A DNA stretch of 63,598 nucleotides, filler included, from Octopus bimaculoides (taxonomy: Eukaryota): the NCBI RefSeq assembly GCF_001194135.2. It is 5 parts of 4 records of this genome, joined end to end, with 100 filler letters (N's around TTAATTAATTAA, not from the genome) between each part and the next. Parts side by side here need not be neighbours in the genome. Positions count along the whole stretch, not along the records: positions 1 to 29,406 come from NC_069000.1; 4 more parts are not named here. The stretch is one strand, 5' to 3'. Under the pieces are notes generated by a model. It ran no database searches, had not been told where the DNA came from, and saw nothing but the letters and a program-made list of their open reading frames with translations. Positions 231-29,949 of the stretch are shown here, piece by piece (within the stretch, counting starts at the first letter, position 1; the number at the start of each line of letters is the position of its first letter). Both the position numbers and the translations under genes were made by a program.

Positions 231-721
231 ATATATATATATACTCTACTGGACCTCCTTAGTCATTCAGTGTATATTTATAGAAAGATTCCTACTGTAT
301 TTTTATAATTAATTATCATTAGGAAGTGTATGAGAAAAATTAAAATATTTTGCGTATTGTATAAGTATAACCAATTTGTTGCACATAAATTTTAACAACA
401 AAGCCTGACATAGTCCCCCAAGGGCCATATGGACCCTGGTTGAGAACCACTGCCTAACCTTTCGTTACCTAACATAAAGCTATGTCCTTCTTTGCTGTAG
501 CCCCTCTCACCCAATGAAGGCCTTAGTCTTGTGAGGTACGTGGAAACCTGTTGTGCAGGTGGCAAAAAAAAAAAAAGAAGGCACCTAGTATACACTTTGT
601 AAAATGGTTGGCATTAAGAAGGGCAACCAGCCATGGAAATCATGCCAAAGCCAACACTGGAGCATGACATTTTCTTTCTTTCTTATGTTATTTTTCTCCT
701 ACTTTTTTCTTTCTTTCTTAG

Positions 722-774
722 GTAATAAGAAGTTATATGGTTGTGCTGCAGCTGCATCTGATTCCGACTCAGAG
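722..774 (+). CDS. GPATCH1: GPATCH1 exon (GNKKLYGCAAAASDSDSE)
   Basis: Long pyrimidine tract, cttag acceptor, gag|gttagt donor; matches the GVKIYGCA region of human GPATCH1. Confidence 0.85.
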
Positions 775-2679: not shown

Positions 2680-2715
<36 letters not shown>

Positions 2716-3127
2716 GTCATTTATAAGGGCAAATAGTAGCGTGTGGGTTAATAAATCACTTTGAATATATAAATTGATAAATTTGAAGGCTGTCTGTGGG
2801 ACTTGAACCCACTTCTCCTGTAAATATAGTAGACGTTCTACCAGTGAACCAAAGCAATCCCTTGAATTTTAGAAGCTTTGTTCTTACAAGTGAGAATTGT
2901 ATGTTGTTTATATCAAGAATTTAGAAACTTTGAGAGAACGTGAAATAATTAATTTATAATGGTGTAATTCAAAGCACACAGAGCTATAAGTAATAACATT
3001 TAAACATTATTTATAGCTTTATGCACTTCATGTTCCACCATTATAAATGAATTATTTCACATTCTTTGGAAGTTTCTGAATTCTTTTGATGTTAGCAATA
3101 TGTGTGTGTGTGTGTGTGTGTGCGTGT

Positions 3128-3164
<37 letters not shown>

Positions 3165-5034
3165 ATTAAATGTATTTATTCTATCCTAATAAATAATAAT
3201 TCTGATAGAATAAATGGGTTAATAGAAACCAAGGTAGCAAAGATCACGAAATAACTGTGGTGTAATTCCTGTTGGTGAGGCAGAAACTCCTTGATATTTT
3301 GGGTATTTGAGTATATTTAAAAATTTAAGGAATGGAGAAAACGCATGTTATAACTGCATACTTTATTCCGACATATGTTTCGAAGAATTACAATTTATGC
3401 GATCCATAGNNNNNNNNNNNNNNNNNNNNNNNNNNNNNNNNNNNNNNNNNNNNNNNNNNNNNNNNNNNNNNNNNNNNNNNNNNNNNNNNNNNNNNNNNNN
3501 NNNNNNNNNNNNNNNNNNNNNNNNNNNNNNNNNNNNNNNNNNNNNNNNNNNNNNNNNNNNNNNNNNNNNNNNNNNNNNNNNNNNNNNNNNNNNNNNNNNN
3601 NNNNNNNNNNNNNNNNNNNNNNNNNNNNNNNNNNNNNNNNNNNNNNNNNNNNNNNNNNNNNNNNNNNNNNNNNNNNNNNNNNNNNNNNNNNNNNNNNNNN
3701 NNNNNNNNNNNNNNNNNNNNNNNNNNNNNNACATGTATACATATATATATACGTATACACACACATGCACATACATACATACATACAAGCATACAAATAC
3801 ATATATATATAAAAAACCCATATGAATTTATATACATATACCTATACAAGCCTACACACACATACACATATATATACACACACACACATATATATATATA
3901 TACACACACAAAACCTAATCACACATATATATACATATGCATTCATACATATATATACACACATATATACATACATACATATACTTATATACTTACACAT
4001 ATACACACGTATACTTACAAACATACATACATACATCTACACATATATATATATATATATATATCATGTTTAATCTTCACAATATCTGAGAATATTGTTT
4101 TCCACCTGTTTGCCCTAGGCGTTTGGAGTAGGTGCTATGGAGGAAGATGATGAAGATATCTATGCAGCTGACAGTTTATCTAAGTATGATCAGTCGATTG
4201 GGTTTGCTGATGAAGAAGATGATCTACATGGATGGACGGCACCAGGTAGAAACAAACCAGGTAAAAGCAGAAACAAAATTAATTCACAGCTTAGAAAATA
4301 CCATATTTGAAGGCATATAAGATGAACTTTTATTTTCCAAACATGTCTCAAAAAAAATCATTCCAGGTCCTATATGCCAAGCTGAGCCTATATGCTTTAA
4401 CCTTTAGCATTCAGATTATTTTCTTAAATGCAATACTTATTTATTCATATTGCTTGAATTAATCATGCACTATCTCATAACTTTGAGATTTTGATGATGG
4501 ATTTTTCTTTTATTCTTTTATTCTTTCACTTGTTTCAGTCAGTTGATTGCGGCCATGCTGGAACACCACCTTGAAAGGATCCAGTAAAACAAATCAACCC
4601 CAGGACTTATCTTTTTTTTTTTAGCCTAGTACTTATAGTATCGGTCTCTTTTGCCGAACTGCTTGGCAACACAAGTTGTCAAGTGGTAATGGGGGAGTCA
4701 AACATGGACACACACACACACACACATACACACAATGGGCTTTTTCCAGTTTCCATCTACCAAATCTGCTCACATGGCTTTAGTTGGCCCAAGGTTATAT
4801 TAGAAGTCACTTACCCAAGGTGCTATGCAGTGAACAATCTTTTCTTAGTGGTCAGACCATATGGGGTCTACATCTAGCATATTGGATGTCCACTTAGTGG
4901 TCATCCCCCTTATATGTATGTAATATAATTTTTCTGAATCTTCAGATTTTTTCAATATGCTAGGCCACTTGTTTAAATTGATATAAATTAAATTAATATT
5001 CAATTTTTTACCCTTATTATTTAAATTTATAATT

Positions 5035-5071
<37 letters not shown>

Positions 5072-8000
5072 TTACTCTTTTACTCTTTTCAGTCATTTGA
5101 CTGTGGCCATATGACTGACATAAGTAAGAAGAGAAAAGAAAAGACAAGAGATAATTATTTCTTGTATTTTCTATTGATTATTGACTATTTACAACATTTT
5201 TTATTGATTCTCTTTTTCAGGGCCTGCTCCTCCAATGAATTATGTTGGTAAGATATTGGAAGGTTTCATTCTGTCATCAAAACCTTTAACTCTGAAAGTT
5301 GCTTATCCACCACCACAAATCCCTAAGGGCTACCGGCCATATCATACATTTGAAAAGCTACCTTTAGATATTCAACAATCATCTGAAACACTGAAACCTC
5401 AAAACAGCATACTGAATGCTCTCAGTCGCAGTATCATCATTGGAGAGACAAAAACTACAGGTCAGTCGATTAACTGAAGCTTTGATGGATTTTTGCTTTG
5501 TCGTGATTGTCTTAACCCTTTAGCATTTAACCGGCCATATCCGACCCAAATATGCCTCTTCTTTTAAGTTCAAACTGACCAGGTCTAGCCACTCACACCT
5601 ACCCTACAATGTCATCCTAAAATTAAACAATAAATTCATCAAAATCTCAAAGCTATGAGACAATACATGACTAATTCAAAACAGTAAGGATAAATAGGCT
5701 CAACATTTGGCAGAGTAATTTGAATACTAAAGGGTAGAATGAAGCATGAGTAGAAAATGAGATCTTAATTTAGCAATTATTTCATGGTTTTTAGCCATTT
5801 GACTGTGGTCATATTGGGGCATAACATTATATTGATCTTAATGCCTTTCTTATTGACTGGTACATATTCTTATCACCATCACCATCATTATCATTATCAT
5901 CATTCAATGTCTGTTGTCTATGCTGGCGTCAGGTTGGACGGTTTGACCAGGGCTGGCAAACTGGAAGACTGGACTAGACTCCAGTCTGATTTGGCATGGG
6001 TTCTACAAATGGATGCCCTACCTAGCGCCAACCACTCCAAGAGTGTAATGAGTGCTTTTATGTGCTACCAGCATGGATGCCATTTGTGTGACACCAATAT
6101 CCTGCCACAACTGCGATTTTACTTGGCTTGATGGGTCTTCTTCTCAAGCATGGCATAATGCCAAAGGTCTCGGTCATTCATCATTGCGTCTGTGAGGCCT
6201 GGCACTCAAAAAGTGCTTTTCACATGCCACCTTGCCTTCGTGAGGCCCAGCGCTTGACTCAAAAGGATGAAAAGCAAAGTGAACTTGGGTAAGATTTGAA
6301 ATAAATAATTTTTATCTACCAAATTCATGCACAAGGCGTAGTTGGTCTGAGGTTATAGTGGAAAGTTCTTGCTCAAGGTGCTATGCAGTGGGACTGAACC
6401 CAAAACTATATAGTTCAAAGTGAGCTTCTTAACTACACAGCCACACCTGAGCCTATGATTAATTTTTTTGTAATATCTTAATTAAAATATATTTAATCTA
6501 TTACATTTTGATGAAAATTATGTTTAATCCAATTAGTTATTTTATGTTTGTTTCTTTTCTACTTTCAGGAAGTGTTTTTGATCTAATCAGTAAAAGTAGC
6601 TTAAAGAACTTACCAAAATTTGACAGCAGTAAAATATCGGAGAGTAGTGATGAGAAAACTAAATGTTCTAATGATAATAATAATAATGATTATAATAACC
6701 AAAGCGAGTCAGACACACAAACACCATCCAGTAGTCACAGAGAAGAAACAGAGAAAACTGAAAAGGATTCCACTATTGCTGCTGAAAGTTCATCTCAGAC
6801 CAATCAAGCTTTAGGAATGAAACCATTTAAGATCCAGTCATTTCAGCCATTGCAAACATCCTCTGCACTACAATCAGATTTCCAACCATTCTTGCAAGAC
6901 CCTTCAAAACAAGAACGATACAACAAGTACTTACTGTTGTTGAAACATGGTAAAGTTGGTAAGTTGGTTAGTCATATGCTTAGTAAAAAGAAATTTGATA
7001 AAAGAGTCATTAGAAATATAAATCTCAAATTTTATTTTTTATTTCGTCTACTGATTACTACTTTATCTAACGTCTTATATAACTTCTTTATTATTACTAG
7101 ATCCATACAGCCTTGTCTGTGACTCTACCATGACAGAATGGGAGCAGGAAATTGAGAAAGAAGAATTCTCGGAAGCAGCAAAACTATTCAAACCTCTAGC
7201 TGCTGCTATGGCATCTCGGTTCACCAAAGCCAAGTTCCATGATGATGCAGATTCTGTAGAACTTCCTGAAGATGTCACTGTAAGTTTTATCTTTTCTCAC
7301 AAACGCTTAGGCCCTGATGATTTACCAAGTCAGGAATACCAGAATTACATTCCAAAGACTCTTTTAAGTTTAATTATAAGTCTTTGTTACTTTTTTCCTC
7401 ACTTTTTTCTGTTTGTTCTTTTATTGCTTGTTTAGGGGTGTAGCCAGCCCACTTATGCGTACCTTTCCTTCATTGGACACTAAACTCTGCTTGCGAAGAC
7501 TTTTTGAGGCAAGTCAAATCGAAATCGAACTAAATTTGACGACTGGCACCCATGCCAACATCGTCTCCTTCACTGGACACGAAACTCAGCTTGCGAAGAC
7601 TTATTGGGGCAAGTGAAAGCAAAATCGGGATGGCACCTGTGCCCAGCGTCGCCTTTCTGGCACTTGTGCCCGTGATATGTGTAAGGATTTTCGAGCGAGA
7701 TCGTTGCCAGTGCCCCTGGACTGGCTCTTGTGCGGGTGGCACATAAAAGCACTCACTACACTCTCTGAGTGGTTGGTGTTAGGAAGGGCATCCAGCTGTA
7801 GAAACTCTGCCAAATCAGATTGGAGCCTGGTGTAGCCATCTGGTTTCACCAGTCCTCAGTCAAATCGTCCAACCCATGATGATGATGATGATGATGATGA
7901 TTCAACTCTGTATCAATCCAAATTTTGATGTATTTACTTTGTGTTTAACCATTGGGGTAATGAGGACCATCTTAACTATCCTGGGGCTGGCATTGAGCTT

Positions 8001-8352
8001 TGTAGGTATACTGGGGACTGATCAGACTGAGCCATGGCTGGAAGATTCTTTGGCAGTGTGATAGGGAAAGGTGAGGGGAGTTGGGGAGTTGATGACACTT
8101 GCTTTTCTGGCTTACCTGCATTGCTCAGCTGCAGCAATCCTGTTGGTTTTGCAGGTTTGCATGCCCTTTACAGACAGCTGATCACCACTAACCTTTGCCC
8201 TGAATTATCTGCCTCCATGTGCCATGACTGATGCTGAAGACCTTGAGAAAGGCTTTTAACCCTTTAGCATTTAAACTCGGTCTGGGAATTCAACCCATGA
8301 TCTTGCAATTGTGAGTGCATCACCCTAACCACTAAGCCATGTACCTTCACAA

Positions 8353-8388
<36 letters not shown>

Positions 8389-11300
8389 GGTGCTCCAGTA
8401 TGATCACAGCTTTAAAGCTGAAACATTATAAAATAATATATACACAAACACACACACACACACGTATNNNNNNNNNNNNNNNNNNNNNNNNNNNNNNNNN
8501 NNNNNNNNNNNNNNNNNNNNNNNNNNNNNNNNNNNNNNNNNNNNNNNNNNNNNNNNNNNNNNNNNNNNNNNNNNNNNNNNNNNNNNNNNNNNNNNNNNNN
8601 NNNNNNNNNNNNNNNNNNNNNNNNNNNNNNNNNNNNATATATATATATATATATAAGCATGTGACATTGTTTAATTTGTGCTACTTTTTTTAAGACAGTA
8701 GAGTTTGATTAGAAGAGGATTTGGTTGCTATATATAGCATCTTGTAAGTGGTGTTGTTTTGCTCCAGGTTAGCCATGACCATCCCATCTTTTTTTCCAAG
8801 CAGACTGAACCCAAGGCTTCATTATCTATGTCTTTCATTATTACGGCAGATTGTGATTTGAGGGGGATATAGCTGCTACTTCTTGCAGGTTGAGTAATAT
8901 TTGGTGGTCCCTTGTTGACACTGTGCACGTTATGAGTTTATGTAAAGCTGTGTTTATGCCCTGACAGATCAACCATGTTTTTTTCTGGTTTTAATTATTG
9001 CAGGCCAAAAAGAAAGATTTGTCAAATGCAGCAGAAATGAAACTGTATGGAAAATTAACACGGGAAATATTTGATTGGCACCCTGACAAATTGTTGTGTC
9101 GACGGTTCAATGTTCCTGACCCCCACCCAGGGTATGTGACCTACCTTTGTTCTCAATGTATAACTTGTTGTATGGCCCGAAGGCAATTCTGATCAAGCAG
9201 ACCTATAGCATACAGTTAGTTGGTTGAACGAATTAAGTGTGACCCACAACTCTTATTTTTCTCCAGTTATGCCTAGCCTCTACCTAGCTTAAGACTACAC
9301 TGCACTCTCCAATATGCACTGATGAGTCATATGGAGTGGACTGTTACAATGTGGACATACTGCTCTCTCCCCAGTGTCCAGTGTATTTCTGTATACCCAC
9401 AAATTCTCATTGTTTTCATGAAGTAGATTCAACTTGAATTGCTGTTCCTCTATCCTCCTTGACACAATGTTTTGGGTCAGTGAGGCTATTGACTTGTAAC
9501 TAGTATTTCAGTGTTGAATGCAGGGACAGCACTGCTATCTCACAACACACTTTCTTGCTGTAAAGATCCTCTATTTATTATGATGCTTTGTGCTTTCCTT
9601 CATCATCATCATCGTCATAAATTATGATGGTATTACTCTGTTGTTGCCACTATCTTCATTATACATTTATTCAGCAGAATTATGGTTTGACTATTTGAGC
9701 CTGTAACACTGGTTTACCGGTGGATGGCTTATTTTTCTCTATACCATAGCACCACTCTATACTATAGCACCAGTGGGGTGCCAGGTATGTGGTAAAATAA
9801 GGTTCAGGAGGTCAGGGCTCAAAGGGTTAAGCACCCCATATAAACCCACATAACTTCTTTGTATGTTTGGAATTTTTGGAAAATTTTAGGGCGATTTAAT
9901 TGTCATTTTTAGCACAACTCCTGGTCATCTGATACCTTTCTTGTTTCATTTCACTCTCACATGTATTGATGTTTTCCAATATTTTTCTCCCCGTAAACAC
10001 ATTTAATGGAATGATGATGCACCCAAGTGTGGTCCATTGCTAGGATTTAAGCAAAAAATTTGGACGCTCCATATTTTAAACACTGATTTAAAAAAAAAAT
10101 TCGATGAGTGAAATTTTTTGGATTTATGTTTTCAAGTAAAACAATTTTCTCGCATGGCTGGACACGCTTACACAGAAGTTTGGTATATTTTAGGTCTGGT
10201 ATTATTGGTGTACCAAGATCAAGACATGACAAATATTCCATTTTTGATTTTCTTGCACCACCGCCGGTAACAGAAGAGAAAAACAAATGTCAGCAAGGTA
10301 CTGTAATGTGGTCTTTTTTATTTGTATTAAGTCCAACTTTGATTTTATTTATTGTTGTCATTTTTGCTTGCAGTGTTGAGTTTAGTTTGATGTTAGTACT
10401 CTACCTGGAAAGAGGTAGAATTTATTTCAATTTCAAAAATGATAAACAAAAGTTGTAGAAGAAGAATAGAACTAGAAAAAAAAAGCCATGAAACTGCTGC
10501 TGCTTACTAACTACATCATCATCATCATTTAACGTCCATTTTCTATGCTGGCATGGGTTAGGCAGTTTGATTGGAAGTGGTAAGCCGGAGAGCTGCACCA
10601 GGTACCAGTCTGTTTTGGCTTGGTTTCTACAGCTGGATGCCCTTCCTAATGCCACCACTTCATAAAGTATACTGGGTGCCTTTAATGTGTCACTGGTATG
10701 GGTGCCTTTAATGTATCACCAGCATGGGTGCCTTTAACATATCACTGGCACAGGTGCCTTCTATGTGTCACCAGCACCAGCCATGACTATGATTTCACTT
10801 AGTTTGACATGTCTTCTCAAGCACAGTGAATTACTAACAGTTTCAACATCTGAAGATCATATTTCACCATCTCATCCCACATCTTCCTGGGTCTCTCCCT
10901 TCCACAGAGAAAAATATTTTTCATTTTTATTCAAATAACATTGGAAAAGAATAAAATAAATGGGGCAGGAGGTGGTGGGGATGAACAAATTAATGACAAC
11001 CCAATATGGTTAAATTGGTTGAAACAAAGTTCTATCATGGCTAAGGTGCATGAAATACTTGTTAGTCATATATATATATATATATGGCATTAGGAAGGGC
11101 ATCCAGCTGTAGAAACTCTGCCAGATCAGATTGGAGTCTGGTTCACCAGTCCTCAGTCAAATTGTCCAACCCATGCTAGCATGGAAAGCGGACATTAAAC
11201 GATGATGATGATGATGATATAAATATATATATATATATTCCTGCTAAGCCAATTTAGCCTCTTTTATGAGTGTATATGTATGTGTGTGTGCGTGTGTACT

Positions 11301-11741
11301 CTTGTTTAGATATATGATGTTTGTAAATGAGCATCGTTATCATGCATGTCAAGATCATATGTCCCCTTTGAAGCTTTTTTCTTTCTTTTTTTTTCTACTT
11401 CATTATTTGGGGATTTGTTTTTTCTTCTTGAATCCTCTGTATTTTTGCTTTCAATGCTGATCCATCATTATCAGCTGATCCTCTGAAGAGCAGTGACAAC
11501 GCGGCAAAGAATACCAGTGATAAAACAACAACCCCTGCACCTGAAAAACCTTCCATTTTCAGTCACCTAATGGCTGAGAAGCCAGCCTCTACACCTTCCA
11601 GCTCTGATAGTCCCGACAAAGAACCAGTGATAACATCAACTCCTCAACCAGTAAGTAAAAAAATTAGTATTCCACCCTTTCAGTCGGGGACTGAATTTGA
11701 TCTGAAATTTAAGTCTTTATGCTTACTTTAGAAATCATTAC

Positions 11742-11804
<63 letters not shown>

Positions 11805-14195
11805 GAAGGTACCAAGCTGGCAGAATTGTTAGCATGCTTGACAAAATGCTTAGTGATATTTTGCCTGTTGCTACATTCTGAGTTCAAATTCTGTTGCGGT
11901 CGACTTTACCTTTCATCATTTCAGGGTCAATAAAATAAGTACCAGACAGTACTTTGTGCAATATGTGTGCAGTTCCAAGTAATGCCGATTTTTGCAATAC
12001 ACCTAGATTGTAGGTTATTTCTTAAGTTTCCTGATGTTTTTCTAGGTTGGGTGGTATTGAACCCAATGTTCCGATGACAATAGGGACAACCTTTATGCTT
12101 GACTCTCGTAGCTGCCACATCTTAGCGATCTCAATTCTCAGGTCTCCGTATTCATCAATCTTTTCTCTTTCTTTCATGATAATATGTTGATCTCCTGGTG
12201 CTGCCTCATCAGTTATTAGGCACTCTTGTTTTGTCCCTCCTAAAGCTTACTAACACCTTGTCTGTCTGGAAGTCAAAGTCCCAGAGGATTTTTCCCTCCC
12301 CCTTTTTGTCCATTACCTTTTCTGATGTATGTTTCATAGATTTTCAACCTGGTTGAAAATCTCTCAACCAGGTTTCTATCTTTATCCTTATTCCATCTTT
12401 GTTACGAGGTCAATTTTGTCTTTAATCATTTAAAGGGCAGAGAATTTTGGTGGTTTACAAATGAACTTGAATTGTGTTCAGAGTTGAAGGAAAATTTCTT
12501 TGCAGTGAATTATATTGTATTTTGATTTATGAATTTACACATAATATGGCTTATGTTGACTTGTGAAGTGAAGCTGATGTGGGACACAAATATTTTAAAC
12601 TGCCCCAATAAATACTTTTGTTTTATTGGATTTGTTATTTATAGAAGCCTTCTGGTTTCTTTCATTTCAGACTGTAGAAGAGGGAGAGAGGCCACCTATG
12701 GATCTCTTTAAAGCTATATTTGCTGACTCATCCTCAGATAGTGAAGAAGAGGAAGAAGAAGAGAAGCCTGAGAGAAAGACAGAAGAGCACAAAGAGGAAG
12801 AAAAGAAGAAAAAGGAAGGAGTGAATGAAAATGAAAAAAATAGGGCAAAAGAAACAGAGTCCAAAGAGAAAGAATTGAAGCCAACATTACCACCAGGTAA
12901 ATCAGTCTGTATTAAATGTGAATATCAAATTTGCATTTATGTATCTGAGTTTTGTGTGTATATATATATATATATATACTCACGCACACATATCTTTTAT
13001 TAGTCATTAGACTGTGGCCATGCTGGGGTACCACATTGAAGAATTTTTAGTTGAATGAGTTGAACTCAGTACTTAATATTTTGCTAAGCCTGGTACTTAT
13101 TCCATCGGTCTGTTTTGCCAAACTGCTAAGTTATAGGTATGTAAGCCTGCCAACACCAGTTGTCAAGCAGTGGTGGGGACAAACAAACATAAAAACACAA
13201 ACGCACCAAGTTCCAATGTCTGTTTTAGGTAAGACATGTACTTTGTAACCATGGGACCTCAGCTTCAGTCAGACTACATGGTACNNNNNNNNNNNNNNNN
13301 NNNNNNNNNNNNNNNNNNNNNNNNNNNNNNNNNNNNNNNNNNNNNNNNNNNNNNNNNNNNNNNNNNNNNNNNNNNNNNNNNNNNNNNNNNNNNNNNNNNN
13401 NNNNNNNNNNNNNNNNNNNNNNNNNNNNNNNNNNNNNNNNNNNNNNNNNNNNNNNNNNNNNNNNNNNNNNNNNNNNNNNNNNNNNNNNNNNNNNNNNNNN
13501 NNNNNNNNNNNNNNNNNNNNNNNNNNNNNNNNNNNNNNNNNNNNNNNNNNNNNNNNNNNNNNNNNNNNNNNNNNNNNNNNNNNNNNNNNNNNNNNNNNNN
13601 NNNNNNNNNNNNNNNNNNNNNNNNNNNNNNNNNNNNNNNNNNNNNNNNNNNNNNNNNNNNNNNNNNNNNNNNNNNNNNNNNNNNNNNNNNNNNNNNNNNN
13701 NNNNNNNNNNNNNNNNNNNNNNNNNNNNNNNNNNNNNNNNNNNNNNNNNNNNNNNNNNNNNNNNNNNNNNNNNNNNNNNNNNNNNNNNNNNNNNNNNNNN
13801 NNNNNNNNNNNNNNNNNNNNNNNNNNNNNNNNNNNNNNNNNNNNNNNNNNNNNNNNNNNNNNNNNNNNNNNNNNNNNNNNNNNNNNNNNNNNNNNNNNNN
13901 NNNNNNNNNNNNNNNNNNNNNNNNNNNNNNNCTCTCACTCTTTCAATTTGTCCTCCGTGTTCTTTTGTAGAAGAAATCAGTTGTAGTCAGGTCTGAATCT
14001 GGACAGAGTTGGGCTTTTCTCAGGCCTACAAATGTCCAAGACAAACCGTATATCATGGCAGTGCCCTTATGACTCCATCAAGGAATTGAGAGCCCAAAGC
14101 AAGTCAACCTTAGTGGAATTTGAACACAAAACAAAGACATGAGATGCTGCTAAGCATGTCGCCCGGTGTGCTAACGATTTTGCCAGCTTGCCACC

Positions 14196-19439: not shown

Positions 19440-19522
19440 TTACCACATATTAGGGGTTTGTTGTGAAAGGAATGTTCGAATTCGTTGAAGGAGTTCTCGT
19501 TTAACATCATCAGGAACAAGAG
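19440..19522 (-). CDS. ENY2: ENY2 last exon ([27 protein letters not shown])
   Basis: Strong pyrimidine tract and ttcag acceptor on -; TAA ends at 19440. Confidence 0.95.
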
Positions 19523-22380
19523 CTGAAGTAAAAAAAGGAAAAAATATTTAACAGAGTATATTGTTATCATTTTATTGTTCATTTTTCTATACAGGGATGG
19601 CTCGGACAGACAGACAGACCATCATAATCTAAGTCAGCTCTTATTCAGAGTTACTTATTTCTTTATTGCCCACAAGGGGCTAAACATAGAGGAGACAAAC
19701 GGATTAAGTCGATTATAGCGACCCCAGTGCGTAAACTGGTACTTAATTTATCGACCCCGAAAGGATGAAAGGCAAAGTTGACCTCGGCAGAATTTGAACT
19801 CAGAACGGAACGGCAGACGAAATACCGCTAAGCATTTCGCCCGGCGTGCTAACGTTTCTGTCATCTCGCTGCTCTTATTCAGAGTAACTGACATCTTAGA
19901 GGAGTCAGAAGGTAATGTCTTGCACACAGGTTCCATTATTTTGATATGTTTTCTATAGCTGGATGCCCTTCCTAACACATGCTGCCACTTTATAGTGTAG
20001 TGGGTGATGGGATAGCGAGAGAGACAGAGATGGAGAGAGCTAATAACTATTAGAGATGGATGATGGTACATGTTAATAAAGAGTCACTCGGAGAGAGAGA
20101 GAGTATGATGACCAGTAGTGGAGAAGGGTCAGGGTACTGGTCAGTGTATGGACAGATTTGTTGTCATATTCCTCACTAAACAGGCATCAAGACAAGGGAT
20201 TGATGATAGAAGAGTGGTAAAGTGATAATGGCTTATGGTAGAGAGATTGAATATGGACAGATCAAATGAGGTGCAAGACAAGGCTGTGTGGTTAAGAAGT
20301 TTGCTAACCAACCACATGGTTCCAAGTTCAGTCCCATTACGTGGCACCTTGGGTAAGTGTCTTCTAGTATAGCACCAAGCAGACCAAATCCTTGTGAGTG
20401 GATCTGATAGACAGAAAATTGAAAGAAGCCTGTTGTGTGTCTCTCCTTTTCTTGACATTGTGTGATAGTTGCAAATGACTGTCATTGTCATTTATTTCCA
20501 ATATTTCACATGAACACAGTTGGCGGTGAAGAAATATTACCTTGCTTGGAAACAGGTGAGGATTGGTAACAGGAATGGCATCTGGCTGTAGAAAATTTGC
20601 CCCAAACTTTATCCAACCCATGCAAGTATGGAAAAATGGATGTTAAAATGATGATGTTACACAGAGTTTTACATTAATAGGAAAGACAATGAGTGCAAAG
20701 TGGACATCAACATCTGATGTCCACTTTCCATGCTGGCATGGGGTAGATGGTTTGACTGGAGCTGATGAGCCAAAGAGCTGCACCAGGTTCCAGTCTGATT
20801 TTGCATGGTTTCTACATCTGGATGCCCTTCCCAACACCAACCACTCCAGGAGTGTAATGGGGGCTTTTACGTGACAGCAGCAATGACCATGATTATGATT
20901 CACGGGTGGGTGCCATTTACATGGCACTGCCAACGACCAGGACTATGATGCACAATTGCAGTAGAAGAGACACAAACATACCTCGACCAGTTGGTGTTAT
21001 CTGTGTGACCAAATCATCCACCGTTACACATTCAAGTCCTTTTTTCTTCACTATGTCTGAAAAACAAGCACACAAACAAACAAAAAAATAAGGATATAAA
21101 TTGCAATATAACATTGATTTCTGACATTGTAATGTAGTCTCAAATATATGACAGAAGAGTTTTAGCAACTGAATCGGCATTAATGTATAGCTGATATTTT
21201 ATTTTATTGTTCTGATATTAGTTATAGTTGAAATATAACACAGAGGATCACAATGCATGGGCGACTGCTGGTCTTCCATAAACCACCTTGCTCAGACTTG
21301 TGCCTCAGAGGTGAACTTTCTAGGTGCAATCCCGTGGTCATTCATGACCAAAGGAAGTTTAACCCTTTACTATCATTATTATTATAATTATCATTAGTTA
21401 GCAGAAATGTTACAGTGCTAGACTAAAATGGTGAAGAACAGGAAAGAATGAAAAGTAATCATTTACACTGTAATACTAACCTTTGCAATGTGCTTTCAGT
21501 TGGTCCCTCCATCCACATTCAATTAATCGAGTTCTTAATAACTCCTTTAACCTGAAATTAAGAAAAAAGAGATACCAAAATTAAATTACTTTCAATGAAT
21601 GTATTTGATTAGGAAAAGTCAAGTGACTGACTATTAATCACACTTCATGAAATGTGCCCGCGGCATGAGTAAGGACTTTCGAGCGAGATCGTTGCCAGTG
21701 CCCCTGGACTGGCTCTTGTGCGGGTGGCACATAAAATACACCATTTCGAGCATGGCCGTTGCCAGTACCGCCTGACTGGCCTTCGTGCTGGTGGCACGTA
21801 AAAGCACCCACTACACTCTCTGAGTGGTTGGCATTAGGAAGGGCATCCAGCTGTAGAAACTCTGCCAAATCAGATTGGAGCCTGGTGTAGCCATCTGGTT
21901 TCACCAGTCCTCAGTCAAATCGTCCAATCCATGCTAGCATGAAAAGCGGACGTTAAACGACGATGATGATGATGATGATTTTTACATGACACCGGTGCAG
22001 GAATCTTCCCCTTCACCAGGGGAAGCATGGGTCTTCTTGAGTACAGCAAGGTGCTAGGTATCTCAGTCTTTTGTCATCTCACTTCAGCTGAGAGTCTAAT
22101 CTCGATAGTGTATGCAACTTACTAGAAACTCACCCATATTCCACACTCCATCTCACAGTGTTTCCAATATTGACTGCTCTAGTTCATTATTAAGCCAATT
22201 CTACTATTAAACTGGCTAATAATTAAAACATTTACATTAATGCTCCAGCATAGCCACTGCTAACTGAATGAAACCAGTAAAAGAATTTGCCATAATTACC
22301 TTTCTCTTTCACCGCTCTCCATCAGTTGCTGGTTTATTACAGCTCGAAGCTGAGCATCTTTCGCTTTCCTTTCAGGATTT
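19440..22380 (-). CDS. ENY2: Transcription and mRNA export factor ENY2 (Sus1): join on - of 22380-22300, 21551-21481, 21056-20982, 19522-19440; start exon not located
   Basis: Spliced product (x)[102 protein letters not shown], collinear with human ENY2. GT-AG introns with phases 2,1,1. Confidence 0.96.
20982..21056 (-). CDS. ENY2: ENY2 exon ([25 protein letters not shown])
   Basis: tttcag acceptor, g|gtatgt donor, 75 nt. Confidence 0.95.
21481..21551 (-). CDS. ENY2: ENY2 exon ([23 protein letters not shown])
   Basis: tttcag acceptor, g|gttagt donor, 71 nt. Confidence 0.96.
21640..21978 (+). mobile_element. Young family A copy in ENY2 intron
   Basis: CpGs retained, (GAT)n tail. Confidence 0.85.
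22300..22380 (-). CDS. ENY2: ENY2 exon 2, ancestral-like copy ([27 protein letters not shown])
   Basis: cttgtag acceptor, ag|gtaatt donor, 81 nt, phase 2-2; resembles human [21 protein letters not shown]. Confidence 0.93.
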
Positions 22381-24549
22381 CTACAAGATAAATTAGACAA
22401 TAAATAAATAAATAAAACAAAAACCTAACAAAACAAAGAAGACCCCACAAAACACAAAAAATATTTTAAGATTATGAAAATCATAATGAAGTAAAGCAAC
22501 TTAATTTAAAGTGGTGTAATTTCAAAGCAAAACATTTTCATCCATTTTAGTGACATATTCGGATGGTTGTGTGGTCAAGCTTATTTTGCAAGCTTGTGGC
22601 ACCTTGGACATGTGTCTTCTACTATAGACCTGAGTCAACCACTGCCTTGTGAGCGAACTTGTTAGATGGAAGCTGTGTAAAAGCCTGTCAAGGTTAGTGC
22701 TGGTGATATGTAAAAGGACACCTGTGCTGGTGACATGTAAAAGGCACTTGTTCTGCTGACACACAAAAGAAATCTGTACTGGTGATACGTAAAAGACATC
22801 CAACACATCCTGTAAAGTGGTTGGTACTAGGAAGGACATCCAGCCATAGAAACCATGCCAAATCAGAGTGGAACCTAGTTCAGCTCTCCGGCTTGCCAGC
22901 TCTGGTCAAAACAGCCCAACCCATGCCAGCATAGGAAACGGACGTTAATTCATGATAATGATGATGATGATGATATTCACCTTGTACCTTGACCATGCAT
23001 CTCTTTCTCTTTTCAGATGGGCAAGACATGTATGCACCACATCTGCAAGACACCTGCTCCTGTCCCCACATCTAGCTTTCTCATCCCTCAATATTGTACC
23101 CCACTTAGTTGAGCGAGTCTTGTCTTGCAAGTACTTGGTGACCTCACTAGTGCTGGTGCCATAAAAAAAAAAAACATCCTCTACACTCACTTTGTGAAGT
23201 GGTTGGTATTAGGAAGGGCATCCAGCTGTAGAAACCATGCCAAAGCAGACATTGGAGTTTGGCACAGCCCTCTGGCTTGTCTCAACATCATTGTTCAATG
23301 GGTTGGATGGTTTGACAGGAGCTGGCCAGGTAGAAGACTGCACTAAACTTCTGTATCTGTTTTGGTACAGATTTTACAGATAGATGCCCTTCCTAAAACC
23401 AACCACCCTGCAGAGTGGCTTATCTATTCATTTCAAACCATCCAAGACATAGCAGTATGGGAAAATGTTGTTATATAATAATGAAGATGAATGATGATTA
23501 TTATGTAATTAATAAAGTTGTCTGACATCTAATCAGTGGCATTCTTCAATGGAGGATTAATGTAATTGACTTCAAGGAAGTGCTTTTCCAAGCTTTAACC
23601 CTTTAGCATTTAAACTGGCCGTTTCTGGCCCAAATATTCTACTTGTTTTATGTTCAAACCAGCTAGAGCTGATCTATAACATTTACCCAACAATAACATT
23701 CTAAAAATAAGCAATCACATCATAAAAGTCTCAAAGCTGTGAGATAATGCTTGATTAATTCAAAACAATTGAATAAATAAGCATTACATTTAACAGAATA
23801 ATCTGAATACTAGTGTGTACAGCAAGAAAATGAAATAATTCTGAATTATATAGAACTACTGCCAGCCTAGTGTTGCAAACGTGAATGAATTTATAAAAAT
23901 GGTTTGAATGACCAGACCATCTAAAACTAGTTTCCTTTTATCTTTTACTTGATTCATTCATTGGACTGCAGCTATACTGAGGCTCTGCTTTGAAAGGTTT
24001 TAGTTGAACAAATTGACCCCAGTTCTTATTGGTTTAACCAGAGCTGGCAAGCCCAAGAGCTGCACCAGGTTCCAGTCTAGTTTGGCTTGGTTTCTATGGC
24101 CTTCCTAATGCCAACCACTTTACAGAGTGTGCTGAGTGCAGTTAACGTGGCACCACACGAGCACTATTACATGGCACTAGCATCAGTGCTTTTTACATGG
24201 CACTGGTGCAGGAGTCTTGCAGGCCAGTCTTCTTCACCAAGGGAAGCAGCCTTGACACATTTGCTGTGGAGTATGGGTCTTCTTGAGTACAGCAAGGTGC
24301 CAGGTATCTCAGTCCTTTGTCATCTCACTTCAGCTAAGAGTCTAATCTCGATAATGTATGCAACTTACTAGAAACTCACCCATATTCCACACTCCATCTC
24401 ACAGTGTTTCCAATATTGACTGCTCTAGTTCATTATTAAGCCAATTCTACTATTAAACTGGTTAATAATTAAAACGTTTGCATTAATGCTCCAGCATGGC
24501 TACCATTAAATGATTGACACTAGTAAAAGGATTTGCTATAATTACTCAC

Positions 24550-24630
24550 TTTTCTCTTTCACCACTGTCTTTCAGTTGCTGGTTCATTACAGCTCGAAGC
24601 TGAGCATCTTTGGTTTTCCTTTCAGGATTT
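24550..24630 (-). CDS. ENY2: Duplicated ENY2 exon 2, diverged copy ([27 protein letters not shown]); alternative exon or pseudoexon
   Basis: Same 81-nt length and phase 2-2, no stop, intact cttgtag acceptor, aa|gtgagt donor. Eight substitutions versus 22300-22380. Whether it is used is unknown. Confidence 0.6.
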
Positions 24631-27554
24631 CTACAAGAAATTAGACAATAAAAAATAAATTTTGATTATATTGAACATATAATCAAAATCTTTGTATCTC
24701 CTAACCATACATTTCCTTTACAGCAGCACATCTGTTTCTGCCCTCTTTCTTGTTAACTTTCTCTCTCTCTCTCTTTCTGGATGGATAACCATGTACCTCT
24801 TCTACAGCAAGACATCTGTTTCTGTCTCTCTGTCACACTTGAACCATTCATCATCTGGCACAAGATCACCTCTTCCAATGCCCCATCCTTTCTCAAAGAT
24901 TTCTTGTCTTGCAAAGTTACTTGGTGACCCTGCCAGTGCAGGTGCCACTTAAAAAGCATCCATTCCACACTGTAAAGTGGTTGGCATTTGGAAGGACATC
25001 CAGCTGACCTTGCCTGCACTGTGCGGTGTGGTTGGCATTAGGAAGGGCATCCAGCCGTAAAAAAGCCATGCCAAAACAGACACAGAAGTCTGGTGCAGGC
25101 TCCTGCCTGGTCAGCTCCTGTTAAACTGTCCAACCCATGCCAGCATGGAAGGAGGACATTAAACAATGATAATGATGAATGAAACAGTGATATGAAGATC
25201 AAATCAACAAAGTGGAAATAAGAACATTTATTAAAATAGAATTTCCATGGGTTCTGCTGGTCACAACAACTATAACAATAATAATCCTTTCTACTGCAGG
25301 CACAAGGCCTGAAATTTTGAGGGAGGGGGGCCTAGTTGCTTACATCAAACCCATTGCTCAACAGATACTTATTTCGTCGATCCTGAAAGGTCAAAAAGGC
25401 AAAGTCAAACCTAGACAGAATTTGAACTCAGAGCATAAAGCCAGAAGAAATGCCACTACGCATTTTGTGCGGTGTGGTAACAATTCTACCAGCTTGCTGC
25501 CTCAATAAAAATGGTTTCAAGTTTTGGCACAAGGCCAGCAATTTTAGGGAAGGAGTAAATCGAATAGTGAAAAGAGGTTGCAGGTTATATTGTAATAAAA
25601 GGGTAAGATCCAGAATCCAAGGCGACTTGTGGTAGTCTGTGTTGGTGAAAGTTAATCCACAAAAGTTTATAAAAGAAAAGTAAAGCACATTGAAATGTTG
25701 AGGATGAGTGAAAAAATCTATCATGCCAGACACCTGGTCTATTTTGGAGAGAGAGAGAGAATATAGAGGCCTTAACACCACCTTCATAGATGGATTAAAT
25801 AACTTCAAAATATATTTGGTTTCAAATATTAATGTCTTAATGAGGTTCTAAAGACATTACCGTAAGTTGAAAAGATCTTTGCTACTATACACAAGAATCT
25901 GTGGTGTAATTTTGCTAGAATTCACTCTAATCTCATTTGATAATTATAACAGGATAACAGTAATACAGTATCTGCTGCAGCCTTCTATACTCAAGAGTAA
26001 CCTCCTACGTTTTCAACCTTTACTTTTCAATTATGCTGCCTCATGATACTGATGTCTTTATATAATATAAAGGCATGTTGAGTTAATCTTTCTTGTCACA
26101 GTTTGAGATTGATTTTATTGCATTAATCTTCTAAACTTATTATGGATTACTGTTGTGAATCTGACAATTTTTCAGCATCACTAGACACAAACTGATGTCA
26201 CTCAAGTTGAAAAATCTTTGGCCCAAGTGTACATTGTATGCTTCAGTGAGCTTCATTGCAATAAAAAGCTTGGAAAATGTTACCAGCTAAATACAAAAAG
26301 GTTATAATGATATAGCATAAAAACCTAGAGACATATGTCTAACGGGAACAGGAGAAAGACATAATTGTCAAAATGTGCTACAAGTAAGATAGTCAGCAAC
26401 CAGGAAATGACCAAAATGTGACTAACTGATTAATATAACCAGATTGATAACTTGAATTTTAATTAGTACAACTTATATTAATAATAGTGATGATTATAAT
26501 GATAAATTCAAGGCTCAGAATCATTTACTGTAAGAGAAGATAGTGTTGTTTTGAATTGATTCAAGTATATTTAGTAATAAATCAATGAACACAGAAAGAG
26601 AAAAAAAATCAATCCAGACAAGACTGAACATAAGAATGAAGCAGTAAAGATATTGTCAAAAAAAACAAAAAAAAAACAATAAGTACTTTATAATAAGAAA
26701 CCCAGACAAACTAGTCAGTTTATTTCAAACTTAGTCTGACATTCCTAGCTCAATTTTTATGTATATATTAACTCCTAGAAAATATCTACAGCACTAAAGT
26801 ATCAAGAAGAATAAATAGGTTATGCAAACATCAGGGTCAATGGTGTGTAAAATATGTAGATGAAAGAATATAACAGGTTTTTGAGAACAATGAAATTAGG
26901 TAAATTAGGAAAAAAAAAAAGTGGTGTGTATGTGTGAGCTTCATATATCTATTTATGTCAAGAAATGCGAAGTTGAATAGACATACAACTAAAGCTAAGT
27001 GGTTTCTAATTTGATTATCTCGAATAATTCCATCAAATTTTAATGTAGTTATCTCTTCATAATTATTATAATAAAATAAACATATAATCATTCACATAAT
27101 AGGATTATAAAATTACTATAGAATAATCCTTTAAAGCTTAACATCAACAATATTAAACCTCCAATGTTGGCACTTGTCACAATTACATCTCTAAACATAA
27201 TCAATAATTTTTATTATTTCAAGTACAAAGCAAGGAAAAGGATTAAAAGGAACTTAATTCCATCAGGCATATAAAAGTGGGGTTATTTGCTGTCAATAAA
27301 GTAAGTGTGCTGGAGAGTAATTCTAACTTAATAATGACCCAAAGCAGTCTATATTCTAATTTCAGTGGTACTTCCTATCATTATAATTATCATGTTAATG
27401 CTCTTAGGAATAGCATTAACTGATACTTTGCTTGCCTGTAGTAGTGGGTTCAAATCCCTTAAATGTATAGTTAGGAGAAGTAAAGACACCACTAAATTAA
27501 CTTCAACTTAGATACTCTACCTATAAATATAAATTTATTATAATGTAATTTGAG

Positions 27555-28045: not shown

Positions 28046-28645
28046 TAATTCCCACTTCTTTAGAATACAAGATCTAATGCAATGAATAAGAGTGCTGTGT
28101 TTTGAGTCAATGCCTTTGTCAAGGAGCATCGGCCTGGGTGTTCCAGCTTCCCACAGCTCCCATCCCCAAGCAGTTTAGAGAAAGTATTCCATGAGAAATC
28201 ATTATGCAGTGACATTAAAGCTGTGTGCGTTTTCACACCTTCAAGTATTGTTGGATATGAATAAATTTAACATAGAACGAGAAACCAATTGTAACAGTAA
28301 TGTCACAATTAGCTGTATGTATGTATGTATATGTGTGTGTGTGTGTGTATGTGTGTGTGTATATTCTTTTATTTGCTATAGCCATTAGACTTTGGCCAGT
28401 ACCTATTTGAAAGTCTTTTTTAAAGTCTGGTACTTTTCCTATCGATCACACCCGCACACAATATATATGTATATATATATATATATATATATAGGCGCAG
28501 GCTTGCTTCTCAACCACATGGTATATATACGTGTATGTATGTATACATATATATATATATATATGGCAGCAGTGACATGACTGAAAAAAGTAAAACAATA
28601 AAAAATTGCTTGTGTGTGTGTGTCTATATATGTGTCTGTGTTTGT

Positions 28646-28809
28646 CCCCCACCATTGCTTGAAAACCGATGTTGGTGTGTTTACGTCCCTGTAAACTAGC
28701 GGTTCGACAACAGAAACCGTTAGAATACCCCCACCATCGCTTGAAAACCAATGTTGGTGTGTTTACGTCCCTGTAAACTAGCGGTTCGACAACAGAAACC
28801 GTTAGAATA
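28646..28809 (+). repeat. 82-bp direct tandem duplication inside a SINE body; same unit recurs at 29284-29406 between gaps
   Basis: cccccaccat.gcttgaaaacc.atgttggtgtgtttacgtccctgtaaactagcggttcgacaacagaaaccgttagaata twice. Confidence 0.85.
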
Positions 28810-29949
28810 AGTACTAGGCTCACAAGGAATAAGGGTAATTTTTCAGTCAAATGACTGAAACAAAAGAATATGTGTGTGTGTGTGTATGTACACTACGGAC
28901 ATCTATGTATGTTTGCACGTACATACACATATACGTATGTATGTAGTCTGCACATGCATACATACATATGTATGCAATGTTCGCTAAGTAAAATACAAAC
29001 TTGAATAACAGTACAATACCAAAGCGAACTTCATCAAATTCTCTAAAGAAACCAGTACTTCAAATATTTATATCTAATAATAACCGTTACAGTACTTGAT
29101 CCAATACAACAGTGACCCCTGCCAGATTCTGGTACGGGTGACGAAGCAAGAAACACAGCATGTAAACCCTCGAAAAATAGCATTTCAGCGCAACTCCCAA
29201 GCAAACAATATTGTTAAATGTATAATTTAAATAGGCGCAGGAGTGGCTGTGTGGTAAGTAGCTTGCTTACCAANNNNNNNNNNTGTTTACGTCCCTGTAA
29301 ACTAGCGGTTCGACAACAGAAACCGTTAGAATACCCCCACCATCGCTTGAAAACCAATGTTGGTGTGTTTACGTCCCTGTAAACTAGCGGTTCGACAACA
29401 GAAACCNNNNNNNNNNNNNNNNNNNNNNNNNNNNNNNNNNNNNNNNNNNNTTAATTAATTAANNNNNNNNNNNNNNNNNNNNNNNNNNNNNNNNNNNNNN
29501 NNNNNNTATATATATATATATATATACATACATACATACATATATATGTATTTATATATTTATACATTTATACACATATATATATTTATACATACATGCA
29601 TGCATACATGTGCAAGTGTGTGCATGTATTTGTGCGTATAGATATGTCTGCGTATATATCATATACGCCTCTATAGGCCTGTGTTAGTCGTGGGATATGG
29701 GTCCCGTTTGAAACCGCTCGTTAAATAGTTTAGTAATCACTTCTAACTACATTTAGAAATTTATGCATGGGGTACAGGTGTTTAGATGTGGATGAGGTCT
29801 TTATGATGTACTGACAGGAAACCGAGACACAATATGATATTTTGAAGGGTCTAGAGGAAAGGTTAATATGTAATATAAGCTTCACCTTTGATTTTGAAAG
29901 GGGATGTTGATCCTCGCAAAATCGTAAGTGCACACACGTGCACATACAT

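What the first reader, a model, noticed from the sequence alone, without database searches (positions are those of the whole stretch)
22300..24630. ENY2/Sus1 carries two in-frame copies of its symmetric 81-nt exon 2: candidate mutually exclusive or tandem-inclusion isoforms
Seen: exon 2 (22300-22380) is duplicated 2250 nt upstream (24550-24630) in the same orientation, inside the same gene. Both copies are 81 nt, phase 2-2, stop-free and have AG/GT sites. The copy changes five residues (A>T, I>M, M>K, E>D, R>K) through 8 substitutions, only one synonymous. Either copy alone, or both together, keeps the frame. Known: ENY2/Sus1 is a ~100-aa five-helix protein wrapping Sgf11/ATXN7L3 (SAGA DUB module) and Sac3/GANP (TREX-2); yeast SUS1 is regulated by exon-2 skipping and intron retention. 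Inference: exon choice could yield ENY2 variants with an altered or doubled helix 1 and different SAGA versus TREX-2 partitioning. The excess of nonsynonymous change is equally compatible with a decaying pseudoexon.
Basis: partly seen in the sequence, partly recalled or inferred. Interest (0 to 1): 0.75.

Follow-up and report, generated by a model that had tools for sequence, protein, structure and literature searches.

The report
Duplicated exon 2 in octopus ENY2
Octopus ENY2, a small adaptor protein shared by two gene-expression complexes, carries a real second copy of its exon 2 that is at least 34 million years old; public gene models splice it in together with the original exon, not instead of it, so this is an ordinary kind of event in an unusually conserved gene.

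Summary
The window is Octopus bimaculoides chromosome CM046620.1, with ENY2 on the minus strand. Exon 2 (22380-22300) has a second 81-nt, in-frame, AG/GT-flanked copy at 24630-24550, with 8 substitutions and 5 residue changes.

It is not an assembly artefact. O. sinensis and O. vulgaris carry the same copy with the same derived changes. Argonauta hians has a single exon 2. The duplication therefore predates the split about 34 My ago and is octopus-lineage specific.

The duplicated block is about 0.45 kb: the acceptor, the exon and roughly 390 nt of intron. A shared 4-nt insertion gives copy B a consensus GTGAGT donor while keeping it 81 nt long.

Public models already include it. O. sinensis isoform X1 and the O. 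vulgaris protein (132 aa) read exon1-B-A-3-4-5, and X2 (105 aa) skips B. No protein with B replacing A is on record. So tandem inclusion is partly supported and mutually exclusive splicing is not. B alters three ENY2-invariant helix-1 positions.

New here:
- The distal introns of the two copies evolve in concert (gene conversion) while the exons stay distinct.
- Both copies carry an identical 45-nt element complementary to a conserved site in intron 1, a candidate docking-site/selector structure.

Function is untested, and low-level noise is not excluded.

The parts
24550..24630 (-). Exon B: upstream duplicated copy of ENY2 exon 2 (81 nt; encodes [27 protein letters not shown]). An in-frame ATG created by the I>M change lies at 24587-24585.
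   Evidence: Present with the same derived changes in O. sinensis and O. vulgaris. Included in RefSeq and ENA protein models.
24544..24549 (-). New GTGAGT donor of exon B, created by a 4-nt insertion relative to copy A. The ancestral GT is 4 nt downstream and would shift the frame.
   Evidence: Shared by all three Octopus species.
22300..22380 (-). Exon A: canonical ENY2 exon 2 (81 nt; [27 protein letters not shown]), covering helix 1, the hinge and the start of helix 2.
   Evidence: aligns to human ENY2 4DHX residues 6-28.
24187..24655 (-). Duplicated block, copy B (about 25 nt of acceptor region + exon + about 390 nt of intron, with indels towards its 3' end, where it abuts a SINE-like repeat).
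   Evidence: (families D1, D6, D16).
21976..22405 (-). Duplicated block, copy A.
24275..24396 (-). Part of the intron downstream of exon B where copies A and B share species-specific bases (concerted evolution by gene conversion). The counterpart downstream of A is about 22030-22150.
   Evidence: 7 species-grouping sites and 0 paralog-grouping sites here, against 0 and 10 in the exon plus proximal intron; Fisher p=5e-5.
24399..24444 (-). Candidate selector B: 46-nt intronic element 106-151 nt downstream of exon B, identical to selector A.
22153..22198 (-). Candidate selector A: identical element 102-147 nt downstream of exon A.
27323..27367 (-). Candidate docking site in intron 1, 2.7 kb upstream of exon B. 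It is complementary to both selectors (33 bp, -39 kcal/mol). A 54-nt core is identical in the three Octopus species.
21481..21551 (-). ENY2 exon 3 (71 nt).
20982..21056 (-). ENY2 exon 4 (75 nt).
19440..19522 (-). ENY2 exon 5, coding part including the TAA stop.

Best explanation
A segment of about 0.45 kb containing ENY2 exon 2, its 3' splice site and about 390 nt of downstream intron was duplicated into intron 1. This happened in the Octopus lineage, after the split from Argonauta and before the O. bimaculoides / O. vulgaris-sinensis split about 34 My ago. The upstream copy (B) now behaves as an in-frame alternative cassette exon. When B is skipped, the canonical 105-aa five-helix ENY2 is made. 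When B is included it is spliced to exon A, not in place of it, giving a 132-aa protein with a 27-residue N-terminal extension that is a diverged extra copy of helix 1. SHOWN: the duplication and its extent; its presence and frame in three species and its absence in Argonauta; the new consensus donor; the existence of public models with B+A and with A only; gene conversion of the distal intron while the exons stay distinct. INFERRED: that the models reflect real transcripts; that copy B went through an early burst of amino-acid change followed by constraint; that the one docking site in intron 1, pairing with the selector just downstream of B, loops B out and so favours the canonical isoform; and that the extra helix has any function at the protein level.
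For: Anatomy. Gene identity: Pfam EnY2 at 115-117 bits against a cut-off of 27, and human ENY2 4DHX at E=3.8e-45. Species: the window is 100% identical to O. bimaculoides GCA_001194135.2. Exon B in O. sinensis (L001) and O. vulgaris (L002) carries all six derived substitutions and the 4-nt donor insertion. Argonauta hians has a single 78-nt exon 2 and no second copy in 26.8 kb. Isoforms on record: P0121 (132 aa, exon1+B+A), P0123 (105 aa, A only) and P0001 (starts inside B, continues into A). Constraint since the split: exon B differs at 1/81 against 6.0-7.3% in orthologous introns, p=0.016-0.064. Rate: 6 substitutions on the B stem against 1 on the two later B branches, p about 0.008-0.07 depending on the assumed stem length. 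Donor AAA|GTGAGT matches the consensus as well as any constitutive donor of this gene. AlphaFold2 on the B+A protein gives helix 2-22 (pLDDT about 60-70) followed by the five canonical helices at pLDDT >90. Docking site and selectors: 33 bp, -39 kcal/mol, z=-6.8 against shuffles, the best of 3926 windows across the 29-kb piece, single-copy elements, with the docking site 54/54 and the selectors 53/53 identical across species. Split time of 34 My: PMC10700109.
Against: No read-level evidence could be examined, and the gene models are predictions. The O. vulgaris pipeline also used UniProt O. bimaculoides and O. vulgaris proteomes as evidence, so the three models are not fully independent. The B lineage shows about 6.5 nonsynonymous and 0.5 synonymous changes, which does not differ from neutral expectation (p=0.2-0.6). 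Three changes hit family-invariant positions, as expected for relaxed constraint. The cross-species conservation test rests on effectively one species pair and is borderline. Intactness over 34 My at about 6% divergence is not improbable for a neutral 81-nt segment. A duplex of -39 kcal/mol or better is found for 18% of random 55-nt windows in this TE-rich locus. No covariation is available, because all paired positions are invariant.
Confidence: 0.6

Rival explanations
1. Non-functional duplicated pseudoexon. B is a neutral by-product of a local duplication that still has usable splice sites. It is included at low, noisy levels, or mainly by gene predictors, and the 132-aa protein has no role.
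For: All B-lineage changes are amino-acid changes, and three hit positions invariant in 39 other ENY2 (I>M, aliphatic>K, E>D). The ratio of nonsynonymous to synonymous change is not distinguishable from neutrality. No transcript or peptide data were accessible. The collection contains no Logan (read-assembly) copy of any Octopus ENY2 isoform.
Against: The frame, AG acceptor and GTGAGT donor are retained in three species across about 34 My. Exon B is at least as conserved between species as constitutive exon A (1/81 against 2/81) and more so than introns. The 4-nt insertion created a consensus donor that exactly preserves 81 nt. Gene conversion homogenised the neighbouring intron but left the divergent exon untouched in both lineages. 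Separate X1 and X2 isoforms were emitted by NCBI's pipeline. To my knowledge that pipeline reports variants only with transcript support, but this was not tested here.
Confidence: 0.3
2. Mutually exclusive exons. B replaces A in some transcripts, giving a 105-aa ENY2 with an alternative helix 1.
For: The exons have equal length and phase, which is typical of mutually exclusive exon pairs derived from tandem duplication (PMC9013439, PMC6071210). One docking site with two identical selectors exists. That architecture is associated with mutually exclusive splicing (PMC6071210).
Against: No B-only protein is in the Octopus cluster or by exact look-up, whereas B+A and A-only are both on record. Nothing enforces exclusivity: 81 nt is a multiple of 3, the B-A intron is 2169 nt, and all sites are GT-AG. 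The docking site is upstream and the selectors are downstream of each exon, so pairing loops out either B alone or B+A and never A alone. B alters three family-invariant helix-1 positions.
Confidence: 0.08
3. Assembly or haplotype artefact: the second copy is a falsely duplicated allele.
For: The O. bimaculoides assembly has gaps nearby, and exon 1 itself is lost in a gap.
Against: No gap lies between 19000 and 27704. The copies differ by 10% plus indels. The same copy, with the same derived substitutions and donor insertion, is present in two independent assemblies of other species.
Confidence: 0.01

Closest known systems
Tandem exon duplication giving alternative exons (Letunic et al. 2002 as cited in PMC9013439; human catalogue in PMC9741552 and PMC8373072)
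   Same: Adjacent homologous exons of identical length and phase in one gene. The flanking intron was co-duplicated. The copy has diverged at a handful of residues.
   Different: Most characterised cases are ancient and are spliced as substitutions, one exon or the other (PMC9741552 abstract). Here the event is young and genus-level, and the recorded isoforms include both exons or only the original.
Docking-site/selector competing RNA structures created by duplicating one arm of a stem (Ivanov & Pervouchine 2018, PMC6071210; Dscam exon 6, 14-3-3zeta, srp)
   Same: One unique intronic site is complementary to an element that was duplicated together with the exon, giving two identical competing partners. 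The elements are invariant across the available species.
   Different: The selectors lie downstream of the exons and the docking site lies upstream, so pairing encloses B, or B+A, rather than exposing one exon. There is no covariation and no functional test. Comparable duplex energies are common in this TE-rich locus.
ENY2/Sus1 regulation by splicing and by whole-gene paralogues (yeast SUS1 two-intron alternative splicing, PMC3201863 and PMC4691836; Drosophila e(y)2b retrocopy, PDB 9JUA and PMC12611072)
   Same: Diversification or dosage control of the same small adaptor protein. In yeast, an intronic RNA structure modulates SUS1 expression.
   Different: Those cases involve intron retention, exon skipping or whole-gene copies. 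An internal exon duplication adding a sixth helix is not mentioned in the metazoan e(y)2 survey: a term search for 'exon duplication', 'tandem', 'isoform' and 'mollus' found nothing.

Membership tests
ENY2/Sus1 (Pfam PF10163 EnY2) | Match to the family profile above the curated cut-off | tested here: met
   115-117 bits against a cut-off of 27 for P0121, P0123 and P0001.
ENY2/Sus1 (Pfam PF10163 EnY2) | Five-helix articulated hairpin as in solved ENY2/Sus1 structures | tested here: met
   E=3.8e-45 to human ENY2 4DHX_B over residues 6-98. The AF2 model has the five canonical helices at pLDDT >90, plus one extra N-terminal helix from exon B. The fold is described in PMC3378895.
ENY2/Sus1 (Pfam PF10163 EnY2) | Binding to the Sgf11/ATXN7L3 and Sac3/GANP helices | not testable with these tools
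   Needs complex modelling or biochemistry.
Tandem exon duplication | Two homologous exons, adjacent, same strand, same gene, same length and phase | tested here: met
   81 nt each, 90% identical, 2250 nt apart, with no other exon between them.
Tandem exon duplication | Duplication is genomic and heritable, not an assembly error or dispersed repeat | tested here: met
   Orthologous copies in O. sinensis and O. vulgaris. The block occurs only twice per locus. It is absent in Argonauta.
Alternative cassette exon | Isoforms with and without the exon | tested here: inconclusive
   Public protein models with B (P0121, P0001) and without B (P0123) exist, but no reads or junction counts could be examined.
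Mutually exclusive exons | Exactly one of the two exons in mature transcripts | tested here: not met
   Recorded models contain both exons or only A. B-only sequences are absent from the collection. This is a database test, not a read-level test.
Mutually exclusive exons | A mechanism enforcing exclusivity (frame/NMD, steric hindrance, incompatible spliceosomes) | tested here: not met
   The exon length is a multiple of 3. The intervening intron is 2169 nt. All sites are GT-AG.
Docking-site/selector competing RNA structure | One docking site complementary to two or more selectors in the same pre-mRNA | tested here: met
   27323-27367 pairs with 24399-24444 and with the identical 22153-22198: 33 bp, -39 kcal/mol.
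Docking-site/selector competing RNA structure | Evolutionary support (conservation with compensatory changes) | tested here: inconclusive
   All paired positions are invariant in three species, so there is no covariation. No homologue was found in Argonauta. The locus background rate of equally stable duplexes is 18%.
Docking-site/selector competing RNA structure | Effect of the pairing on exon choice | not testable with these tools
   Needs minigene mutagenesis.

The most novel reading that the evidence does not exclude
Octopuses have evolved a regulated, protein-level ENY2 variant with a sixth helix, a neofunctionalised copy of helix 1. Its distinct sequence is kept by selection against the gene conversion that homogenises the adjacent intron. 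Its inclusion is set by competition between two identical intronic selectors for one docking site in intron 1. The extra helix changes how ENY2 grips ATXN7L3 (SAGA deubiquitinase module) or GANP (TREX-2).
Probability: 0.12. Interest if true: 0.6.

Novelty: new member of a known kind. Interest (0 to 1): 0.35.

Why it matters
ENY2/Sus1 is one of the most constrained small adaptor proteins in eukaryotes. In 39 other metazoan sequences, several helix-1 positions are invariant. A lineage-specific isoform that adds a diverged helix 1 would be a natural experiment on how the 'gripping' helices of ENY2 recognise their partner helices in SAGA and TREX-2.

For the evolution of splicing, this is a young, datable exon duplication: present in Octopus, absent in Argonauta. 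It has three features together that are rarely seen at this early stage:
- a newly created consensus donor that preserves the frame;
- gene conversion that stops short of the exon;
- a duplicated intronic element complementary to a single upstream site, which is exactly the starting configuration proposed for docking-site/selector systems (PMC6071210).

If B turns out to be noise, the locus is still a clean example of how gene predictors propagate duplicated exons into reference proteomes.

Tried and rejected
1. Exon 1 in the window. A pattern search for ATGGCNGAGT found no exact hit. Comparison with O. sinensis shows that exon 1 (ATGGCCGA|gtaagt) lies in an assembly gap of O. bimaculoides just outside the piece.

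2. B-only isoform. It is not among the six members of the Octopus ENY2 cluster. Exact look-ups found nothing for two B-only forms, a B-only form starting at the internal Met, a form skipping both exons, and the full O. bimaculoides tandem form.

A 44-aa query returned no candidates because of the word index, so this is uninformative and cost one search.

4. Dispersed-repeat or TE origin of the exon block: rejected. Only two copies exist per locus, and only the 3' end (block positions >430) is a SINE-like repeat.

5. Independent duplications in each species, as an explanation for the high within-species identity of the intron: rejected. The exon, the proximal intron and the donor insertion group by paralogue across species.

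6. Positive selection on B: not demonstrable.

7. Known RNA family or tRNA at the conserved intronic block or docking site: none found.

8. Docking site and selectors in Argonauta: none, only low-complexity matches.

9. Literature. No paper in the library holds both ENY2 and octopus, or ENY2 with exon duplication.
Full report
**What is in the window.**
The piece is 100% identical to Octopus bimaculoides assembly GCA_001194135.2, chromosome CM046620.1. A tblastn with human ENY2 places a complete set of ENY2 coding exons on the minus strand:
- exon A: 22380-22300
- exon 3: 21551-21481
- exon 4: 21056-20982
- exon 5: 19522-19440, including the stop

The spliced product is 100% identical to the O. 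bimaculoides RefSeq ENY2. It matches Pfam EnY2 (115-117 bits, cut-off 27) and human ENY2 in PDB 4DHX (E=3.8e-45). Exon 1 (ATGGCCGA|gtaagt in O. sinensis, O. vulgaris and Argonauta) is not in the window. The sequence just upstream of it aligns to the edge of a 2.35-kb run of N that ends where the window begins.

**The observation.**
Exon A has a second copy, exon B, at 24630-24550. It has the same orientation, the same 81-nt length, the same phase and no stop codon. Its acceptor is tag| and its donor is |gtgagt. There are eight substitutions, giving A>T, I>M, M>K, E>D and R>K.

The similarity is not confined to the exon. It starts about 25 nt upstream of the acceptor and runs about 390 nt into the downstream intron (276 nt at 93%). 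There it meets a SINE-like dispersed repeat. The block itself occurs only twice per locus.

At the donor, copy B has a 4-nt insertion that creates a consensus GTGAGT. The ancestral GT now lies 4 nt further on and would give an 85-nt, frame-shifting exon. No assembly gap lies between the copies.

**It is old, shared and lineage-specific.**
I fetched the loci encoding the O. sinensis/O. vulgaris protein (L001, L002) and the Argonauta hians protein (L003).

Both Octopus species have exon B. It is 81 nt and in frame, and it carries every derived substitution and the donor insertion. It differs from the O. bimaculoides copy at one base (GTA>GCA, V>A).

Argonauta has one exon 2 (78 nt) and no second copy anywhere in 26.8 kb. 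Using Argonauta and other metazoans as outgroups, all amino-acid changes occurred in B. The two plainly synonymous differences seen in the window arose in exon A of O. bimaculoides.

[quoted passage not shown] The copy is therefore at least that old, and it is not an assembly artefact.

**What public models do with it.**
The 90%-identity cluster of the O. bimaculoides protein has six members.

| Protein | Species / accession | Length | Composition |
|---|---|---|---|
| P0121 | O. sinensis isoform X1 (XP_029647786.1) and O. vulgaris (CAI9737746.1) | 132 aa | MAE + B + A + rest |
| P0123 | O. sinensis isoform X2 (XP_029647787.1) | 105 aa | MAE + A + rest |
| P0001 | O. bimaculoides (XP_014784021.1) | 115 aa | starts at the ATG created by the I>M change inside B, continues through A |
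| P0122 | Argonauta hians | 102 aa | single exon 2 |
| P0124, P0125 | two proteins from read assemblies (Logan), species not determined | 100 and 106 aa | single-copy forms |

The P0001 start is what one expects when exon 1 is hidden in a gap.

The recorded alternatives are therefore 'both exons' or 'A only'. No B-only protein is in the cluster. Exact look-ups of B-only, internal-Met B-only and skip-both sequences found nothing.

These are predictions, not reads. The O. vulgaris pipeline combined Iso-Seq, RNA-seq and ab initio calls with UniProt proteomes of O. vulgaris and O. bimaculoides, so the models are not fully independent.

**Is B constrained?**
- *Between species.* Between O. bimaculoides and O. 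sinensis, orthologous intron differs by 6.0-7.3%. Exon B differs at 1/81 (p=0.016-0.064 depending on the baseline) and exon A at 2/81.
- *Type of change.* On the B lineage there are about 6.5 nonsynonymous and 0.5 synonymous changes. That is not distinguishable from neutrality (p=0.2-0.6). It contrasts with A, which has 0 nonsynonymous and 2 synonymous (Fisher p=0.03-0.08).
- *Timing.* Six of the seven B changes predate the species split. For any plausible stem length this is a burst followed by stasis (p about 0.008-0.07).
- *Positions hit.* Three changes fall at positions that do not vary in 39 other metazoan ENY2: Ile15 (I 37, V 2) to Met, aliphatic position 20 (V/I/L 39/39) to Lys, and Glu21 (39/39) to Asp.

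Taken together, B is not evolving as a replacement helix 1. It either drifted early and then happened to stay intact, or it acquired a different role and is now conserved. The data lean to the second reading but do not settle it.

**Concerted evolution that stops short of the exon.**
In a six-way alignment (A and B from three species), the exon and the first ~30 nt of intron contain 10 sites, plus the indel, that group the sequences by paralogue and none that group them by species. From about 150 to 275 nt into the intron there are 7 sites that group by species and none that group by paralogue (Fisher p=5e-5).

The distal intron has therefore been homogenised by gene conversion after the species split. 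The exon and its donor kept their paralogue-specific sequence in both lineages. This also explains why the within-species identity of the introns (96-98%) exceeds that of the exons (90%).

**A candidate docking-site/selector structure.**
I searched the duplicated intron for complementarity to the rest of the pre-mRNA. The search found one site in intron 1 (27367-27323, 2.7 kb upstream of B). It pairs with an element present identically downstream of B (24444-24399) and downstream of A (22198-22153).

In favour:
- The duplex has 33 bp in helices of 14, 11 and 5 bp plus 3 bp, at -39 kcal/mol.
- It has z=-6.8 against shuffles and is the best of 3926 windows across the piece.
- The elements are single-copy.
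- The docking site (54/54) and the selectors (53/53) are identical in all three species, while the flanks differ.

Caveats:
- 18% of random 55-nt windows in this TE-rich locus find a partner at least as stable.
- There is no covariation.
- Argonauta has nothing comparable.
- Rfam and tRNA scans are empty.

The geometry is docking site upstream and selectors downstream of each exon. Pairing would enclose B alone, or B and A together. This fits B skipping and simultaneous inclusion as alternatives, not substitution of B for A. It resembles the starting configuration proposed by Ivanov and Pervouchine, in which one arm of a stem is duplicated (PMC6071210). I rate it as a lead.

**Protein consequence.**
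ENY2 is a five-helix articulated hairpin that wraps around a partner helix (PMC3378895; PMC2823527 and PMC2726291). Exon 2 encodes helix 1, the hinge and the first turn of helix 2.

AlphaFold2 on the B+A protein gives an extra N-terminal helix at residues 2-22 with pLDDT about 60-70. The five canonical helices follow at pLDDT >90. Whether the sixth helix extends the grip, competes with helix 1 or is simply disordered cannot be decided here.

**Verdict.**

The existence of the two isoforms is already in RefSeq and ENA, but no paper in the library mentions it. It is a new, young member of a well-known class. It has two instructive extras: gene conversion sparing the exon, and a duplicated selector-like element. 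Interest is modest (0.35) and would rise if read-level data show regulated inclusion.

Noticed in passing
just beyond window 29406 (L004 2831-5181): ENY2 exon 1 of O. bimaculoides falls in a 2.35-kb assembly gap. As a result the RefSeq protein XP_014784021.1 is N-terminally truncated and starts at the ATG (window 24587-24585) that the I>M substitution created inside exon B.
   Followed up: yes
window 21824-21875/23355-23406; 24096-24154/24941-24999; 23298-23417/25017-25138: Inverted copies of a SINE-like repeat (46-86 nt, 73-86% complementary) flank exon A and exon B separately. Such pairs could also loop out either exon or promote back-splicing.
   Followed up: partly
L001 about 25490-25800 and L002 about 22130-22440: O. 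sinensis and O. vulgaris have a lineage-specific insertion about 265 nt downstream of exon B, with a tRNA-like head (GGCCTAGTGGTTAGAGC...TTCGAATC), probably a SINE. The sequence immediately upstream of exon B's acceptor (beyond about -12) is also unalignable between O. bimaculoides and O. sinensis.
   Followed up: no
L001 27658 (O. sinensis exon A acceptor): The O. sinensis assembly has ttgAag| where O. vulgaris and O. bimaculoides have ttgTag| at position -3 of the constitutive exon A acceptor. This is a less favoured base there, and it may be a real variant or a sequencing error.
   Followed up: no
window 1-13003 (+ strand) and loci L001-L004: A GPATCH1-like gene (DUF1604, G-patch, TGH domains) converges on ENY2 from downstream, and TRIQK lies upstream. 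The order TRIQK-ENY2-GPATCH1 is conserved from Octopus to Argonauta. ENY2 intron 1 is 12-15 kb in Octopus against 3.8 kb in Argonauta.
   Followed up: partly
window 28243-28975: Sub-threshold Rfam hits to mir-297/mir-466/mir-3149 on both strands (22-44 bits, against gathering scores of 64-101). They lie in simple TG/TA-type repeats and are almost certainly low-complexity artefacts.
   Followed up: no
L003 13796-13873: Argonauta hians exon 2 is one codon shorter (78 nt, ...KNKEELRAAI...) than the Octopus exon.
   Followed up: no
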